From assembly GCF_006345805.1 (NCBI RefSeq), contig NC_043024.1, forward strand, positions 9,300,001-9,364,000: a stretch of DNA of 64,000 nt. Reading direction: 5' to 3'. The notes under the pieces were generated by a model. It did no database searches, was not told the DNA's origin, and worked only from the letters and a program-made list of their open reading frames with translations. Positions 6,834 through 40,184 of this stretch are shown in pieces (within the stretch, counting starts at the first letter, position 1; each line of letters opens with the position of its first letter). The position numbers and the translations under genes are program-made. Source of the DNA: Octopus sinensis (taxonomy: Eukaryota).

Positions 6834-7061
6834 ATGACCATCGGATATCTTCTCTTTGTGGGCATTTGTCTTGGCATTGCCAGACACGTCTATGCCGTGG
6901 ATTTGACCCTGAAACCTGGTGAAACCAGTAATGCTGTCATCGATGCAACCATAAGAAAAATCAAAACGAAATGTATTCTGGCAGAAGATTATTATTTCCT
7001 GAGACGGTTGGCAGAGGCCCAGATGAAATCTATCCCCGCAGGAACGGGTGGAATATGGAGG
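6834..7061 (+). CDS. Exon 1: signal peptide and start of N-terminal domain ([29 protein letters not shown]...GGIWR)
   Basis: GCCATG context, hydrophobic leader, donor GTAAGT at 7062, phase 0. Confidence 0.9.
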
Positions 7062-40000: not shown

Positions 40001-40184
40001 ATCCATACATACACATACACACATTCATATACATATACATATGTAATAAATGTATGTTCATCTTTTATATTTTTCAGCGACCATGATAACTCCAGTAACA
40101 CCAACTAATGCTGCAGTCACTAAACAGCTTCTCATAAACGCATGGGTTTATGCTGGACTCTTACTTGTTTGGCAAATGGCTTGA
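6834..40184 (+). CDS. Spliced gene (22 coding exons, 1283 aa): secreted/GPI-anchored protein with signal peptide, lysozyme-like domain, VWA domain and six tandem Cys modules
   Basis: All introns GT-AG with matching phases; exon lengths 228+289+558+888+888+894+107=3852 nt, open to TGA at 40182-40184. Confidence 0.88.
7698..8362 (+). mobile_element. Family B SINE 3' bodies: fold-back junction followed by a tandem array
   Basis: 7698-7788 is the reverse complement of the SINE 3' end; then ~180-bp units joined at AAAGAAATA|GGTATTTC. Confidence 0.85.
8638..9013 (+). mobile_element. 5'-truncated family A SINE with internal (TA)n/(TG)n
   Basis: Matches the body of the copies at 33816, 50538, 56131; ends in GTAAAAGA repeats. 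Confidence 0.85.
9070..9358 (+). CDS. Exon 2: remainder of N-terminal lysozyme-like domain (VTEAQL...[15 protein letters not shown]...[11 protein letters not shown]...)
   Basis: Acceptor TTTCTGTAG, phase 0 in, phase 1 out, donor GTAAGT, 289 nt open. Confidence 0.9.
10000..10691 (-). mobile_element. tRNA-Arg-like SINE (family C) with three tandem 164-bp heads
   Basis: Head GGCCCAGTGGTTAGGGCAGCGGACTCGCGGTC on the minus strand; units start at 10200, 10364, 10528. Confidence 0.85.
10805..11020 (-). mobile_element. Penelope-like element RT C-terminal fragment
   Basis: [22 protein letters not shown]...[22 protein letters not shown] resembles the PLE FLDV..YRKP..SNHP pattern; interrupted by a SINE at 11022. 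Confidence 0.7.
11022..11990 (+). mobile_element. Family B SINE: one head plus five tandem 184-bp bodies
   Basis: GGTATTTCGTC at 11069, 11253, 11437, 11621; GGTATT at 11805. Confidence 0.92.
12120..12965 (-). mobile_element. Degenerate RTE-clade LINE 3' end with about four internal 100-120-bp tandem copies
   Basis: [20 protein letters not shown]...MDGTCGRRR repeated; resembles the RTE C-terminal RLRWFGHV motif. Confidence 0.75.
13096..13412. mobile_element. Short insertion with 16-bp target duplication and ~75-bp inverted repeats
   Basis: TAACAAGAATTTAATA at 13080-13095 and 13413-13428; 13154-13228 is the reverse complement of 13339-13413 apart from 1-2 mismatches. Confidence 0.7.
13540..14631. 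repeat. ~1.1-kb compound (ATT/ATC)n microsatellite
   Basis: Direct reading; source of the spurious poly-Ile/Asn ORFs. Confidence 0.98.
14682..15239 (+). CDS. Exon 3: von Willebrand factor A domain
   Basis: [12 protein letters not shown] (DxSxS MIDAS), [22 protein letters not shown]; acceptor TTTTTTGCAG, donor GTAAGT, phase 1-1, 558 nt. Confidence 0.97.
15288..15323 (+). ncRNA. Minimal hammerhead-ribozyme-like motif, probably inactive
   Basis: GTTT CTGAAGA A GAGC-GTTT-GCTC GAAAC ATT AAAC; the expected GTH triplet reads ATT. Confidence 0.55.
15539..15574 (-). ncRNA. Minimal hammerhead-like motif, A6U variant, in a TA-embedded repeat
   Basis: Minus strand CTTT CTGTAGA A GAGC-GTAG-GCTC GAAAC GTA AAAG. 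Confidence 0.5.
16021..16360 (+). mobile_element. tRNA-derived SINE in an (ATTAT)n tract
   Basis: GGCTCAGTGGTTAG...GAGCTCGACTCCC head plus TTGAGCAAGACACTTTATTTCACG as at 4183, different 3' body. Confidence 0.75.
16509..16633 (+). CDS. Exon 4 (module 1, A1)
   Basis: CCAG acceptor, GTAAGA donor, 125 nt, phase 1-0, [15 protein letters not shown]...GTTVL. Confidence 0.9.
17185..17419 (+). CDS. Exon 5 (module 1, B1)
   Basis: 235 nt, phase 0-1, [26 protein letters not shown]...[15 protein letters not shown]. Confidence 0.92.
17612..17695 (+). CDS. Exon 6 (module 1, C1; 3 Cys)
   Basis: 84 nt, phase 1-1, [28 protein letters not shown]. Confidence 0.9.
18309..18430 (+). CDS. Exon 7 (module 2, A2)
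   Basis: 122 nt, phase 1-0, [41 protein letters not shown]. Confidence 0.9.
18616..18853 (+). CDS. Exon 8 (module 2, B2)
   Basis: 238 nt, phase 0-1, [26 protein letters not shown]...[15 protein letters not shown]. Confidence 0.92.
19265..19300 (-). ncRNA. Minimal hammerhead-like motif, A6U variant (duplicated at 26859-26894)
   Basis: Minus strand CTGTTGA A GAGC-GTAG-GCTC GAAAC GTA. Confidence 0.45.
19965..20048 (+). CDS. Exon 9 (module 2, C2; 3 Cys)
   Basis: 84 nt, phase 1-1, [28 protein letters not shown]. Confidence 0.9.
20241..23345. repeat. Intronic tandem array, ~489-bp unit, about 6.4 copies, inserted in (TA)n
   Basis: ATCACAATCAAGG at 20241, 20730, 21222, 21706, 22194, 22683, 23168; absent at the paralogous site near 27750. 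Confidence 0.97.
24177..24301 (+). CDS. Exon 10 (module 3, A1')
   Basis: 125 nt, phase 1-0, paralogue of exon 4. Confidence 0.88.
24853..25087 (+). CDS. Exon 11 (module 3, B1')
   Basis: 235 nt, phase 0-1, paralogue of exon 5. Confidence 0.88.
25280..25363 (+). CDS. Exon 12 (module 3, C1')
   Basis: 84 nt, identical to exon 6. Confidence 0.88.
25931..26052 (+). CDS. Exon 13 (module 4, A2')
   Basis: 122 nt, paralogue of exon 7. Confidence 0.88.
26250..26487 (+). CDS. Exon 14 (module 4, B2')
   Basis: 238 nt, near-identical to exon 8. Confidence 0.88.
27564..27647 (+). CDS. Exon 15 (module 4, C2')
   Basis: 84 nt, one amino acid different from exon 9. Confidence 0.88.
28877..29001 (+). CDS. 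Exon 16 (module 5, A1'')
   Basis: 125 nt, near-identical to exon 10. Confidence 0.88.
29495..29729 (+). CDS. Exon 17 (module 5, B1'')
   Basis: 235 nt, one amino acid (L to S) different from exon 11. Confidence 0.88.
29944..30027 (+). CDS. Exon 18 (module 5, C1'')
   Basis: 84 nt, [28 protein letters not shown]. Confidence 0.88.
30089..30320 (-). mobile_element. Family B SINE, full length, 13-bp TSD
   Basis: GTATAATAATACC at 30076-30088 and 30321-30333; absent from the paralogous introns. Confidence 0.9.
30895..31016 (+). CDS. Exon 19 (module 6, A2'')
   Basis: 122 nt, phase 1-0. Confidence 0.88.
31241..31763 (-). mobile_element. Solo LTR (Gypsy-like)
   Basis: TGTA...TACA termini, 4-bp TSD GGGT (31237-31240 and 31764-31767); minus strand carries TATAAATAG then AATAAA in U3-R-U5 order. 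Confidence 0.7.
32168..32405 (+). CDS. Exon 20 (module 6, B2'')
   Basis: 238 nt, phase 0-1, donor GTAAGA. Confidence 0.88.
32462..32855 (+). mobile_element. tRNA-Arg-like SINE (family C), full length
   Basis: A and B boxes, TCG anticodon-like loop, (TTCCA)n tail. Confidence 0.88.
33111..33477 (-). mobile_element. tRNA-Arg-like SINE (family C), inverted relative to 32462; further fragment at 33597-33725
   Basis: Reverse complement of the 32462 copy. Confidence 0.88.
33816..34322 (+). mobile_element. Family A SINE with internal duplication
   Basis: GGCGCAGGAGTGGCTGTGTGGTAAG...GGTTCAGTCCC head; CTTCTGCTATAGCCCCGG segment repeated. Confidence 0.88.
34760..35200. repeat. (TATC/TCCA)n microsatellite
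   Basis: Direct reading. Confidence 0.97.
35216..36621 (-). mobile_element. 5'-truncated CR1-clade LINE (RT domain, 3' UTR, (ATT)n tail), antisense in an intron
   Basis: [39 protein letters not shown]; C-terminus TRGH...[14 protein letters not shown] in a shifted frame. Confidence 0.95.
36677..36766 (+). CDS. Exon 21 (module 6, C2''; 3 Cys)
   Basis: TTTTGCACAG acceptor and downstream intron homologous to exons 9 and 15; [30 protein letters not shown]; 90 nt, weak donor GTAATT. Confidence 0.8.
36849..37226. repeat. (TG/TATG)n compound microsatellite
   Basis: Direct reading. Confidence 0.97.
37336..37888 (+). mobile_element. Family A SINE, partially duplicated head
   Basis: Matches the family A consensus. 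Confidence 0.85.
38268..38898. repeat. (CATA/CA)n microsatellite
   Basis: Direct reading. Confidence 0.97.
39700..39968 (+). mobile_element. Family A SINE 3' body
   Basis: Matches the family A consensus. Confidence 0.85.
40078..40184 (+). CDS. Exon 22 (terminal): GPI-signal-like C-terminus
   Basis: Acceptor TTTTTCAG, phase 1 fits exon 21; [35 protein letters not shown]-stop. Confidence 0.75.

What the first reader, a model, noticed from the sequence alone, without database searches (positions are those of the whole stretch)
6834..40184. Hidden 22-exon gene for a modular cell-surface protein: signal peptide, lysozyme-like domain, VWA, 6 Cys modules, GPI-like tail
Seen: 22 exons splice in frame (1283 aa), with a hydrophobic leader, an intact DxSxS..T..D MIDAS and a short hydrophobic C-terminus with no cytoplasmic tail. 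Known: VWA/MIDAS domains bind ligands via a metal ion. Inference: a surface or matrix adhesion or recognition protein whose stalk is growing by module duplication. I do not recognise this architecture as a characterised protein.
Basis: partly seen in the sequence, partly recalled or inferred. Interest (0 to 1): 0.82.

Follow-up and report, generated by a model that had tools for sequence, protein, structure and literature searches.

The report
Octopus modular VWA surface glycoprotein gene
The 22-exon gene is real and encodes a large secreted, probably lipid-anchored adhesion-type protein. It belongs to an uncharacterised octopus gene family whose stalk has lengthened by recent duplication of a six-exon block, so it is a sound but fairly ordinary lineage-specific gene.

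Summary
Twenty-two + strand exons (6834-40184), all AG/GT, join in frame to 3852 nt and 1283 aa. Every exon matches annotated Octopus proteins by tblastn.

The architecture is:
- a signal peptide
- a 150-aa all-helical N-domain with no Pfam or PDB sequence match
- one VWA domain with a complete MIDAS (Pfam E 1e-43)
- three tandem six-exon units, each two N-glycan-rich beta-sandwich modules and two 3-Cys linkers
- a GPI-signal-like C-terminus

It is a new and the longest member of an uncharacterised paralog family in O. bimaculoides, O. sinensis and O. vulgaris, whose members carry 1-3 modules. The non-octopus relatives examined (Haliotis, Mytilus, Liolophura and unnamed database proteins) share the N-domain-VWA-module cassette but end in chitin-binding CBM_14, EGF or TSP1 domains.

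"Lysozyme-like" is only weakly supported. There is no SLT HMM hit. The fold resemblance is TM about 0.4, and hhalign gives P = 0.046 on the ES...GLMQ motif. The N-domain family is homologous to phage family phrog_3108, of unknown function. The octopus copies have lost the conserved Glu and Gln.

The stalk expansion is real. The units are 91-95% identical including introns, with a mosaic identity pattern best explained by unequal crossing-over. Function is inferred, not shown.

The parts
6834..7061 (+). Exon 1: start codon, signal peptide (aa 1-21), first half of the N-domain (aa 1-76); ends in phase 0
   Evidence: 87% identity to P0003 residues 1-78; donor GTAAGT
9070..9358 (+). Exon 2: second half of the helical N-domain (aa 77-173)
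   Evidence: AF2 model pLDDT 83.8
14682..15239 (+). Exon 3: complete VWA domain with MIDAS (DSSGS at 186; Thr in GNTFTH 255-260; Asp in VTDG 286-289)
   Evidence: 88% identity to the second VWA of P0002
16509..16633 (+). Exon 4: unit 1, module A N-terminal part (phase 1 in, 0 out)
17185..17419 (+). Exon 5: unit 1, module A C-terminal part
17612..17695 (+). Exon 6: unit 1, 3-Cys linker c (phase 1-1)
18309..18430 (+). Exon 7: unit 1, module B N-terminal part
18616..18853 (+). Exon 8: unit 1, module B C-terminal part
19965..20048 (+). Exon 9: unit 1, 3-Cys linker c' (phase 1-1)
24177..24301 (+). Exon 10: unit 2, module A N-terminal part
24853..25087 (+). Exon 11: unit 2, module A C-terminal part (1 nt different from exon 17)
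25280..25363 (+). Exon 12: unit 2, linker c (identical to exon 6)
25931..26052 (+). Exon 13: unit 2, module B N-terminal part
26250..26487 (+). Exon 14: unit 2, module B C-terminal part (2 nt different from exon 8)
27564..27647 (+). Exon 15: unit 2, linker c'
28877..29001 (+). Exon 16: unit 3, module A N-terminal part
29495..29729 (+). Exon 17: unit 3, module A C-terminal part
29944..30027 (+). Exon 18: unit 3, linker c
30895..31016 (+). Exon 19: unit 3, module B N-terminal part
32168..32405 (+). Exon 20: unit 3, module B C-terminal part
36677..36766 (+). Exon 21: unit 3, linker c'. The most diverged exon (about 20%); its donor is shifted 6 nt (GTAATT); the weakest junction
40078..40184 (+). 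Exon 22: tail with candidate omega region T-N-A-A, spacer VTKQLLIN, hydrophobic [14 protein letters not shown], then the stop codon
   Evidence: tail conserved in P0001-P0007
16464..20242 (+). Duplication unit 1 (exons 4-9 with introns)
24133..27851 (+). Duplication unit 2: a hybrid whose 5' part resembles unit 3 and whose 3' part resembles unit 1
28781..36846 (+). Duplication unit 3, interrupted by insertions including an RT-encoding element

Best explanation
This is a genuine protein-coding gene of an octopod. It is the longest known member of an octopus-expanded family of secreted modular glycoproteins.

Proposed mechanism:
1. The signal peptide sends the protein into the secretory pathway.
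2. The C-terminal signal is most likely exchanged for a GPI anchor, which leaves the protein on the outer face of the cell.
3. The membrane-distal head carries the function. It consists of a helical N-domain plus a VWA domain, and the complete MIDAS binds a ligand carboxylate through a divalent cation. The N-domain is a degenerate relative of a phage and invertebrate family with a faint lytic-transglycosylase likeness, and it has lost the conserved Glu and Gln. The closest solved VWA relatives are collagen-binding: mussel byssus PTMP1, collagen VI and the integrin alpha1/alpha2 I domains.
4. The head is held away from the membrane by a stalk of six beta-sandwich (jelly-roll-like) modules. The stalk carries 29 N-glycosylation sequons and six 3-Cys linkers.
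5. Stalk length is set by the copy number of phase-1/phase-1 exon cassettes. These have been multiplied by unequal crossing-over, and any of them could be skipped in splicing without breaking the frame.

Shown: the exon structure, the domain content, the family relationships and the duplication history.
Inferred: GPI anchoring, ligand binding, a non-catalytic N-domain, and inclusion of all 22 exons in one mRNA.
For: Gene model.

VWA and MIDAS. Closest solved VWAs: PTMP1 (E 1e-29), collagen VI alpha3 and the integrin alpha1/alpha2 I domains.

Family: 14 Octopus paralogs with N-domain-VWA-module(s) and, in seven of them, the same tail. Haliotis, Mytilus and Liolophura relatives and unnamed database proteins share the N-domain-VWA-module cassette, followed by CBM_14, EGF or TSP1 domains. 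The module family has only 87 representatives among 1.84 billion proteins. In the full-length (roughly 600-1100 aa) hits it sits at about residues 330-560, the position that follows the VWA in the members whose domains I checked.

Structure: the N-domain AF2 model has pLDDT 83.8 and eight helices. The modules form two beta-sandwiches with core pLDDT 80-89, modelled on the 84%-identical O. bimaculoides unit. Foldseek matches tandem jelly-roll ectodomains and domains (SID1/SIDT2, CUB, CBM22, PHM) at E about 1e-5.

Duplication: units are 91-95% identical in exons and 90-98% in introns, with a mosaic pattern. Unit 2 resembles unit 3 in the module A exons and resembles unit 1 from linker c onward.

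Frame maintenance: 0 exon indels against 21 intron indel events, and P(no stop) is 0.04-0.16 under neutrality.

Cassette skipping has a precedent: O. sinensis LOC115230178 isoforms differ by exactly one module A cassette.

Tail: the pattern is conserved in paralogs P0001-P0007.
Against: - No transcript evidence was available, so the number of units in the mature mRNA is unknown.
- dN/dS between units is 0.6-1.0, so constraint on the amino-acid sequence of the duplicated modules is weak.
- GPI anchoring rests on pattern inspection only. The hydrophobic stretch is short (14-16 residues, mean Kyte-Doolittle score about 1.4) and contains Gln.
- The 3' part of unit 2 differs from unit 1 by only 0-3%. 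That is within the range of allelic divergence, so a haplotype-derived false duplication cannot be excluded without read data, even though there are no N gaps.
- The structure model of the stalk used a proxy sequence, and its linkers are unmodelled (pLDDT about 30).
- No ligand is known for any family member.
Confidence: 0.62

Rival explanations
1. The locus is real, but the 1283-aa product is only the maximal conceptual isoform. Real mRNAs may skip one or more phase-1 cassettes or units. Alternatively, unit 2 may be an assembly or haplotype artefact, so the true protein would have 2-4 modules like its annotated paralogs.
For: All cassettes (a+b, c, a'+b', c') are phase 1-1. Gnomon isoforms of the O. 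sinensis paralog differ by one module A cassette. No annotated paralog I examined shows a c'->a junction. Unit 2 is only 0-3% diverged from unit 1 over its 3' two-thirds.
Against: All 18 unit exons keep open frames and canonical splice sites. There are 21 indel events and a 3.1-kb satellite between and within the units, and no assembly gaps. Unit 2 is a hybrid of unit 3-like and unit 1-like parts, which is the expected product of unequal crossing-over rather than of a simple haplotig duplication.
Confidence: 0.3
2. The protein is not GPI-anchored. It would be a secreted matrix or cuticle component, like its chitin-binding relatives. The hydrophobic C-terminus would then be a tail-less transmembrane stub or a cleaved propeptide, and the VWA domain would cross-link extracellular matrix as in matrilins, collagen VI or byssal PTMP1.
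For: The non-octopus relatives examined end in CBM_14 chitin-binding domains, and one octopus paralog (P0012) still does. The closest solved single VWA domain is the byssal matrix protein PTMP1. No GPI predictor was available.
Against: The tail ends exactly at the hydrophobic stretch with no basic stop-transfer residues. It is preceded by small residues at the spacing expected for an omega site, and it is conserved in seven paralogs (P0001-P0007). No chitin-binding or other matrix-anchoring domain is present.
Confidence: 0.2
3. The family is a diversifying immune or microbial-recognition receptor. The degenerate lytic-transglycosylase-like N-domain would bind peptidoglycan or chitin non-catalytically, and module number and sequence would vary under host-microbe pressure.
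For: The N-domain family is homologous to phage family phrog_3108 and shows an ES...G-x-W-Q motif in register with the SLT ES...GLMQ motif. The octopus copies have replaced the Glu and the Gln. dN/dS is close to 1. The module A exons are more diverged than the intron between them (10.8% against 6.5%, p = 0.016). The family has multiple paralogs in each of three Octopus species.
Against: No dN/dS above 1 was demonstrated. The lysozyme-like assignment is itself marginal (P = 0.046; TM 0.4). There are no expression or binding data. The mosaic divergence can also be explained by gene conversion.
Confidence: 0.12
4. The extra units are decaying duplicates (pseudo-exons) in a gene, or the whole locus is an unexpressed pseudogene copy of the family.
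For: dN/dS is 0.8-0.9 between units, and exon divergence is about equal to intron divergence. There are TE insertions in the unit 3 introns and a shifted donor at exon 21. The database search returned no identical protein.
Against: There are no stops or frameshifts in 3852 nt and all 42 splice dinucleotides are intact. Indels are excluded from the exons (P about 0.001). The MIDAS residues, the cysteines and the tail are all conserved.
Confidence: 0.08

Closest known systems
Uncharacterised Octopus paralogs, for example O. bimaculoides 'collagen alpha-1(XII) chain isoform X1' (P0002) and A0A0L8HVA9 (P0003), and O. sinensis LOC115230178 and LOC115230439
   Same: They share the signal peptide, the N-domain, a single MIDAS VWA, modules A and B with 3-Cys linkers and the TKQLLINAW[IV]YAGLLL[VL]WQMA tail. 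Identity over local alignments is 57-79%. Per exon it reaches about 88-91%, the highest values being to P0002 in the VWA and first module A exons.
   Different: The window gene has six modules (three units) against one to three in the paralogs. The search returned no identical protein. P0001 and P0002 look like fusions of two neighbouring paralogs. The 'collagen XII' name reflects VWA similarity only: there is no triple helix and no FN3 domain.
N-domain-VWA-module-CBM_14 proteins outside Octopus (Haliotis LOC124143446, Mytilus edulis and Liolophura proteins, and unnamed database proteins); EGF and TSP1 variants; an N-domain-VWA-FN3 gene in an ENA eukaryotic contig
   Same: The three-domain N-terminal cassette is conserved, at about 30% identity over 75% of the query.
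   Different: These proteins end in chitin-binding peritrophin-A domains, EGF, TSP1 or FN3 repeats, not a hydrophobic tail. They have one module. Their N-domains keep the YVE[ST]xDG...GGIWQ[IV]D motif that the octopus proteins have lost.
Pif/BMSP shell-matrix protein family (VWA + CBM_14 + laminin G; PMC11291548)
   Same: They are molluscan secreted proteins with a VWA domain, and in the wider family a CBM_14 domain follows the VWA.
   Different: The window protein has no CBM_14 or LG domain. As described, Pif/BMSP proteins have no folded N-domain before the VWA; the pre-VWA insert in the PifS1 subfamily is low-complexity. Placement of this VWA in the Pif/BMSP clade was not tested.
Cell-surface and matrix VWA proteins with MIDAS: integrin alpha I domains, ANTXR1/2 (TEM8/CMG2), collagen VI, matrilins, mussel PTMP1
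   Same: The VWA fold and the full MIDAS motif are shared. Sequence similarity is E 1e-29 to PTMP1 and about 1e-19 to the integrin alpha1 I domain. The design also resembles ANTXR: a VWA head on a beta-sandwich stalk at the cell surface (general knowledge).
   Different: The partner domains, the anchoring (GPI-type rather than transmembrane with a cytoplasmic tail) and the stalk modules all differ. This is a 'works like' comparison, not membership.
phrog_3108 (phage proteins of unknown function) and family-1 lytic transglycosylases (SLT, goose-type lysozyme)
   Same: The animal N-domain family matches phrog_3108 (E 5e-11 for P0049). A megaphage ORF is 34% identical. The window's AF2 model matches a Caudovirales protein at TM 0.74. 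The ES...G-x-W-Q motif aligns with ES...GLMQ of E. coli Slt70.
   Different: There is no SLT HMM hit. TM-scores to solved SLT structures are only 0.39-0.41. In the window protein the Glu is Gln63, the Gln is Arg76 and a 6-residue loop is deleted.

Membership tests
Octopus N-domain-VWA-module-tail paralog family (uncharacterised) | Signal peptide plus N-domain with the CIL..FLRRLA...GGIWRV...[11 protein letters not shown] motifs | tested here: met
   Alignment A1: 64-85% identity to seven Octopus N-domains, with the invariant columns present
Octopus N-domain-VWA-module-tail paralog family (uncharacterised) | Module A / linker c / module B / linker c' cassettes following one VWA domain | tested here: met
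   tblastn and phmmer domain maps; three such cassette sets in the window
Octopus N-domain-VWA-module-tail paralog family (uncharacterised) | C-terminal TKQLLINAW[IV]YAGLLL[VL]WQMA tail | tested here: met
   Exon 22 translation against P0001-P0007
VWA domain with MIDAS (PF00092) | Pfam model above the gathering threshold | tested here: met
   149.4 bits against a cut-off of 23.8, E 1.5e-43
VWA domain with MIDAS (PF00092) | DxSxS, Thr and Asp metal-coordinating residues | tested here: met
   D186-S-S-G-S, a Thr in GNTFTH (255-260), the Asp of VTDG (286-289); metal binding itself was not tested
Lysozyme-like / family-1 lytic transglycosylase (SLT, PF01464) | Match to the SLT or a lysozyme family HMM | tested here: not met
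   No hit for the window N-domain, for 80 family members or for the phage relatives, even at E <= 10
Lysozyme-like / family-1 lytic transglycosylase (SLT, PF01464) | Lysozyme-like fold | tested here: inconclusive
   Foldseek against PDB gave no hit at E < 1, although the best TM-scores, 0.41 and 0.39, are Slt70 and P. aeruginosa Slt. BFVD LT_GEWL proteins score TM 0.35-0.41. hhalign gives P = 0.046 on the motif region
Lysozyme-like / family-1 lytic transglycosylase (SLT, PF01464) | Catalytic Glu of the E-S motif and the G-L-M-Q motif | tested here: not met
   The window has AEAQM (Gln63 at the Glu position) and GGIWR (Arg in place of Gln). The non-octopus relatives keep VE[ST] and GGIWQ
GPI-anchored proteins | N-terminal signal peptide, and a C-terminal hydrophobic segment running to the stop with no cytoplasmic residues | tested here: met
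   Direct inspection; mean Kyte-Doolittle score 1.3-1.6 over the last 14-18 residues
GPI-anchored proteins | Small omega, omega+1 and omega+2 residues about 8-12 residues upstream of the hydrophobic segment | tested here: met
   T-N-A-A followed by the 8-residue spacer VTKQLLIN; analogous S-D-A-A, S-D-I-G and S-G-M-T in paralogs; pattern inspection only
GPI-anchored proteins | Actual GPI attachment (dedicated predictor score, PI-PLC release) | not testable with these tools
   No GPI predictor or experiment was available
Pif/BMSP shell-matrix family | CBM_14 chitin-binding domain (and laminin G) downstream of the VWA | tested here: not met
   A Pfam scan of the full 1283 aa finds only VWA-type models
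Pif/BMSP shell-matrix family | VWA domain falls inside the Pif/BMSP clade | not tested
   No Pif or BMSP sequences were available to build the tree; the family definition is taken from PMC11291548
FACIT collagen XII (the name NCBI gives to paralog P0002) | Collagen triple-helix Gly-X-Y repeats and FN3 domains | tested here: not met
   No Collagen or fn3 Pfam hit in the model or in the listed domains of P0002

The most novel reading that the evidence does not exclude
The un-named N-domain would be an ancient lytic-transglycosylase-like module shared between phages (phrog_3108) and marine invertebrates, in animals fused to a VWA domain. In octopuses it would have been converted into a catalytically dead glycan-recognition head on a GPI-anchored stalk of variable length. 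The family would then be a fast-evolving, copy-number-variable surface receptor for microbial or chitinous ligands, a previously undescribed class of invertebrate pattern-recognition or adhesion receptor.
Probability: 0.1. Interest if true: 0.7.

Novelty: new member of a known kind. Interest (0 to 1): 0.36.

Why it matters
The gene is a clean, datable example of a surface protein lengthening by unequal crossing-over of phase-compatible exon cassettes.

It also draws attention to a conserved three-domain cassette: an un-named helical domain, a VWA domain and an un-named beta-sandwich. The cassette is present in several mollusc groups, and its N-domain also occurs in a starfish protein. It has no Pfam model for two of its three parts and has never been studied.

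Within this family, octopuses swapped a chitin-binding C-terminus for a membrane-anchor signal. That is a testable case of a matrix protein becoming a cell-surface protein in a lineage that lost its shell. The homology of the N-domain with a phage family of unknown function is a small but concrete lead for both fields.

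Tried and rejected
- Looked up the spliced model and P0002 in the contig index.
- A third homologue search with the module profile returned one extra Octopus protein only.
I therefore used the 84%-identical O. bimaculoides unit as a proxy.
- PDB sequence searches with two N-domain profiles found nothing. Pfam and NCBIfam scans of animal and phage N-domain relatives also found nothing.
- I first thought the conserved short ORFs inside the units (APRTEAVC..., [11 protein letters not shown]...) were intronic repeats. The annotated paralogs show that they are the linker exons.
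- I considered the ORFs at 8335-8640 as candidate exons and rejected them: they have no homologue support and sit among tandem repeats.
- I considered PifS1, which has a long insert before its VWA, as the same family. I rejected this because that insert is described as low-complexity.
- A single unequal-crossover breakpoint does not explain everything. The module A exons are more diverged than the intron between them, and this remains unexplained.
- The rest of the window (1-6800 and 40200-64000) holds no further family member, only repeats and RT fragments.

Full report
**Observation**

The window is eukaryotic DNA, AT-rich and full of microsatellites, satellites and LINE fragments. All close protein matches are to Octopus species.

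I took annotated Octopus proteins returned by a homology search and mapped them back by tblastn. That placed 22 collinear + strand segments between 6834 and 40184 and nothing elsewhere in the window. I then fixed each boundary at the AG/GT site that keeps the frame. The result is 22 exons, a 3852-nt CDS and 1283 aa with one terminal stop.

All acceptors have pyrimidine tracts, and all donors are GTAAG-like or GTGAG-like except exon 21 (GTAATT). Exon 21's donor has moved 6 nt because the ancestral GT is lost. The junction residues match those in the annotated paralogs for every junction type except linker c' to module A (exons 9->10 and 15->16). That junction type exists only because the unit is repeated here.

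**Anatomy**

- Exons 1-2 encode the signal peptide and a 150-aa N-domain.
- Exon 3 encodes a complete VWA domain (Pfam E 1.5e-43), with DxSxS at residue 186 and the Thr and Asp of the MIDAS.
- Three six-exon units follow. Each contains module A (two exons, phases 1->0->1), linker c (84 nt, phase 1-1, three Cys), module B (two exons) and linker c' (phase 1-1, three Cys).
- Exon 22 encodes ...[28 protein letters not shown].
- The stalk (residues 359-1249) carries 29 of the 30 N-x-S/T sequons and 30 Cys, five per module plus linker.
- Only the VWA domain is recognised by Pfam, so 86% of the protein has no family model.

**Family**

The nearest proteins are 14 predicted paralogs in O. bimaculoides, O. 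sinensis and O. vulgaris. All are unnamed or named by VWA similarity ('collagen alpha-1(XII) chain'). Their domain maps show the same N-domain and VWA, one to three modules, and in seven cases the same tail. One paralog (P0012) ends in CBM_14 chitin-binding domains instead.

Outside Octopus, Haliotis, Mytilus and Liolophura proteins, unnamed database proteins and an unidentified eukaryotic contig carry the same N-domain-VWA-module cassette. It is followed by CBM_14, EGF, TSP1 or FN3 domains. The N-domain alone is also found in a starfish (Acanthaster planci) protein.

The module is rare, with 87 representative clusters among 1.84 billion. In the full-length hits it sits at about residues 330-560, the position that follows the VWA in the members whose domains I checked.

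I found no paper on any of these proteins. The published Pif/BMSP classification of molluscan VWA + chitin-binding proteins does not describe a folded domain ahead of the VWA.

**The 'lysozyme-like' domain**

- The N-domain has no Pfam, NCBIfam or PDB sequence match, for the window copy or for 80 relatives.
- An AlphaFold2 model built on 13 sequences is confident (pLDDT 83.8, pTM 0.80) and all-helical.
- Against the PDB nothing is significant. The two best TM-scores (0.41 and 0.39) are E. coli Slt70 and P. aeruginosa Slt.
- Against predicted viral structures the top hit is a 1021-aa Caudovirales protein (TM 0.74, E 1e-5). Small phage proteins follow (TM about 0.6), and LT_GEWL proteins come further down.
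- A megaphage ORF is 34% identical to an animal N-domain. That ORF, a Klebsiella phage protein and the animal protein P0049 all match phrog_3108, a family of unknown function.
- hhalign of the 80-member family against five E. coli SLT domains aligns YVE[ST]xDG...GGIWQVD with ES...GLMQI in register. The support is only P = 0.046.

So the label is a reasonable lead and not a demonstrated membership. Whatever the ancestral activity was, all eight Octopus N-domains aligned, the window's among them, have Gln in place of the near-invariant Glu, Arg in place of the Gln, and a six-residue deletion between them. A non-catalytic role is therefore the better guess.

**Modules**

The model shows two beta-sandwiches with core pLDDT 80-89, while the Cys linkers are unmodelled. 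Foldseek matches proteins with tandem jelly-roll or CUB-like domains (SID1/SIDT2 ectodomain, neuropilin and C1r CUB domains, CBM22, PHM) at E about 1e-5 but with low TM-scores. The fold is a generic beta-sandwich, and no specific family can be assigned.

**Duplication history**

The three units align over exons and introns at 87-95% identity. The pattern is mosaic:
- Unit 2's module A exons are nearly identical to unit 3's (1-5 differences) but 9-14% diverged from unit 1's.
- From linker c onward, unit 2 is 0-3% diverged from unit 1 and 5-19% diverged from unit 3.

This is the product expected when a unit-3-type and a unit-1-type repeat recombine out of register.

Module trees place A1, B1 and B2 with the single unit of O. 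bimaculoides P0002, and place A2/A3 and B3 on other branches. The older repeat pair may therefore predate the species split or derive from a neighbouring paralog.

Exons contain no indels whereas introns have 21 indel events (expected about 6.7 in the exons, P about 0.001). Staying free of stops is itself unlikely under neutrality (0.04-0.16). Even so, dN/dS between units is 0.6-1.0. The reading frame is protected, but the amino-acid sequence is only weakly constrained.

One oddity remains. The module A exons of unit 1 are more diverged from units 2 and 3 (10.8%) than the intron lying between them (6.5%, p = 0.016).

**Mechanism proposed**

I propose a secreted, heavily N-glycosylated protein that is probably GPI-anchored. 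Its distal N-domain + VWA head would bind a ligand through the MIDAS cation. The closest solved VWA domains are collagen binders: PTMP1 at E 1e-29, collagen VI and the integrin alpha1/alpha2 I domains. Its reach from the membrane would be set by the number of stalk cassettes. The family appears to have moved from chitin-anchored (CBM_14) to membrane-anchored in octopuses.

Shown: the gene structure, the domains, the relatives and the duplication.
Inferred: the anchoring, the ligand binding, the dead N-domain and the inclusion of all units in one mRNA.

**Caveats and rivals**

- There are no transcript data.
- Cassette skipping is frame-neutral and is predicted for an O. sinensis paralog.
- Unit 2's low divergence from unit 1 leaves a haplotype-duplication artefact possible, although there are no gaps and the unit is a hybrid.
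- The tail could be something other than a GPI signal.
- A recognition or immune role is possible but has no direct support.

**Verdict**

The gene is a new and unusually long member of an existing but unstudied octopus family. It is not a new kind of system.

Interest is moderate to low. The worthwhile leads are the un-named N-domain shared with phages, the CBM_14-to-GPI switch and the well-resolved unequal-crossover history.

Noticed in passing
window 20239-23347: A 488-bp satellite of 6.4 copies at 97% identity fills most of intron 9, between duplication units 1 and 2. It accounts for the 7.7-kb spacing of units 1 and 2 against the 4.7-kb spacing of units 2 and 3.
   Followed up: partly
window 13442-14632: A 1.2-kb TTA/TTATTA-type microsatellite ends about 50 nt upstream of the acceptor of the VWA exon. 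Any effect on splicing is unknown.
   Followed up: no
window 35537-36628 (- strand) and 59037-59603 (- strand): Reverse-transcriptase ORFs of non-LTR-type elements (RVT_1, E 1e-35 and 2e-21). The first lies in intron 20 and explains part of unit 3's expansion.
   Followed up: partly
window 16509-17419 versus 24177-25087 and 28877-29729: The module A exons of unit 1 differ from those of units 2 and 3 by 10.8%, but the intron between the two exons differs by only 6.5% (Fisher p = 0.016; dS 0.12-0.13). Exon-limited gene conversion from another paralog and diversifying selection are both possible.
   Followed up: partly
L002 2848-3459 (megaphage LR756504.1); L003 1288-1857 (Klebsiella phage vB_KpnS_KpLi5 gp60): These phage ORFs are homologous to the animal N-domain family. 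All belong to phrog_3108, of unknown function. The motif VET...G(L/V)(T/W)Q(V/I)D resembles the ES...GLMQ motif of lytic transglycosylases, and E. coli MltD itself reads GIWQI.
   Followed up: partly
L001 6001-11722 (ENA contig ctg137368, 6.5 Mb): Many 'stand-alone' 180-210-aa N-domain proteins from ENA and Logan assemblies may be single exons of eukaryotic genes called by a prokaryotic gene finder. In the one locus I checked, the N-domain ORF is followed by a VWA ORF and four FN3 ORFs.
   Followed up: partly
proteins P0001 (O. vulgaris) and P0002 (O. bimaculoides): Both annotated models contain two N-domain/VWA sets in series and look like fusions of adjacent tandem paralogs. The 'collagen alpha-1(XII)' name for P0002 is unsupported by any collagen or FN3 domain.
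   Followed up: no
window 7784-8357, 10200-10691, 11069-11992: Tandem arrays of 132-184-bp units (2-5 copies, 94-99% identity) lie in introns 1 and 2. The same element family recurs elsewhere in the window.
   Followed up: no
window 8335-8640: Two adjacent open frames (...[16 protein letters not shown] / [29 protein letters not shown]...) in intron 1 look like a transposon-derived coding relic from memory. They have no Pfam hit.
   Followed up: partly
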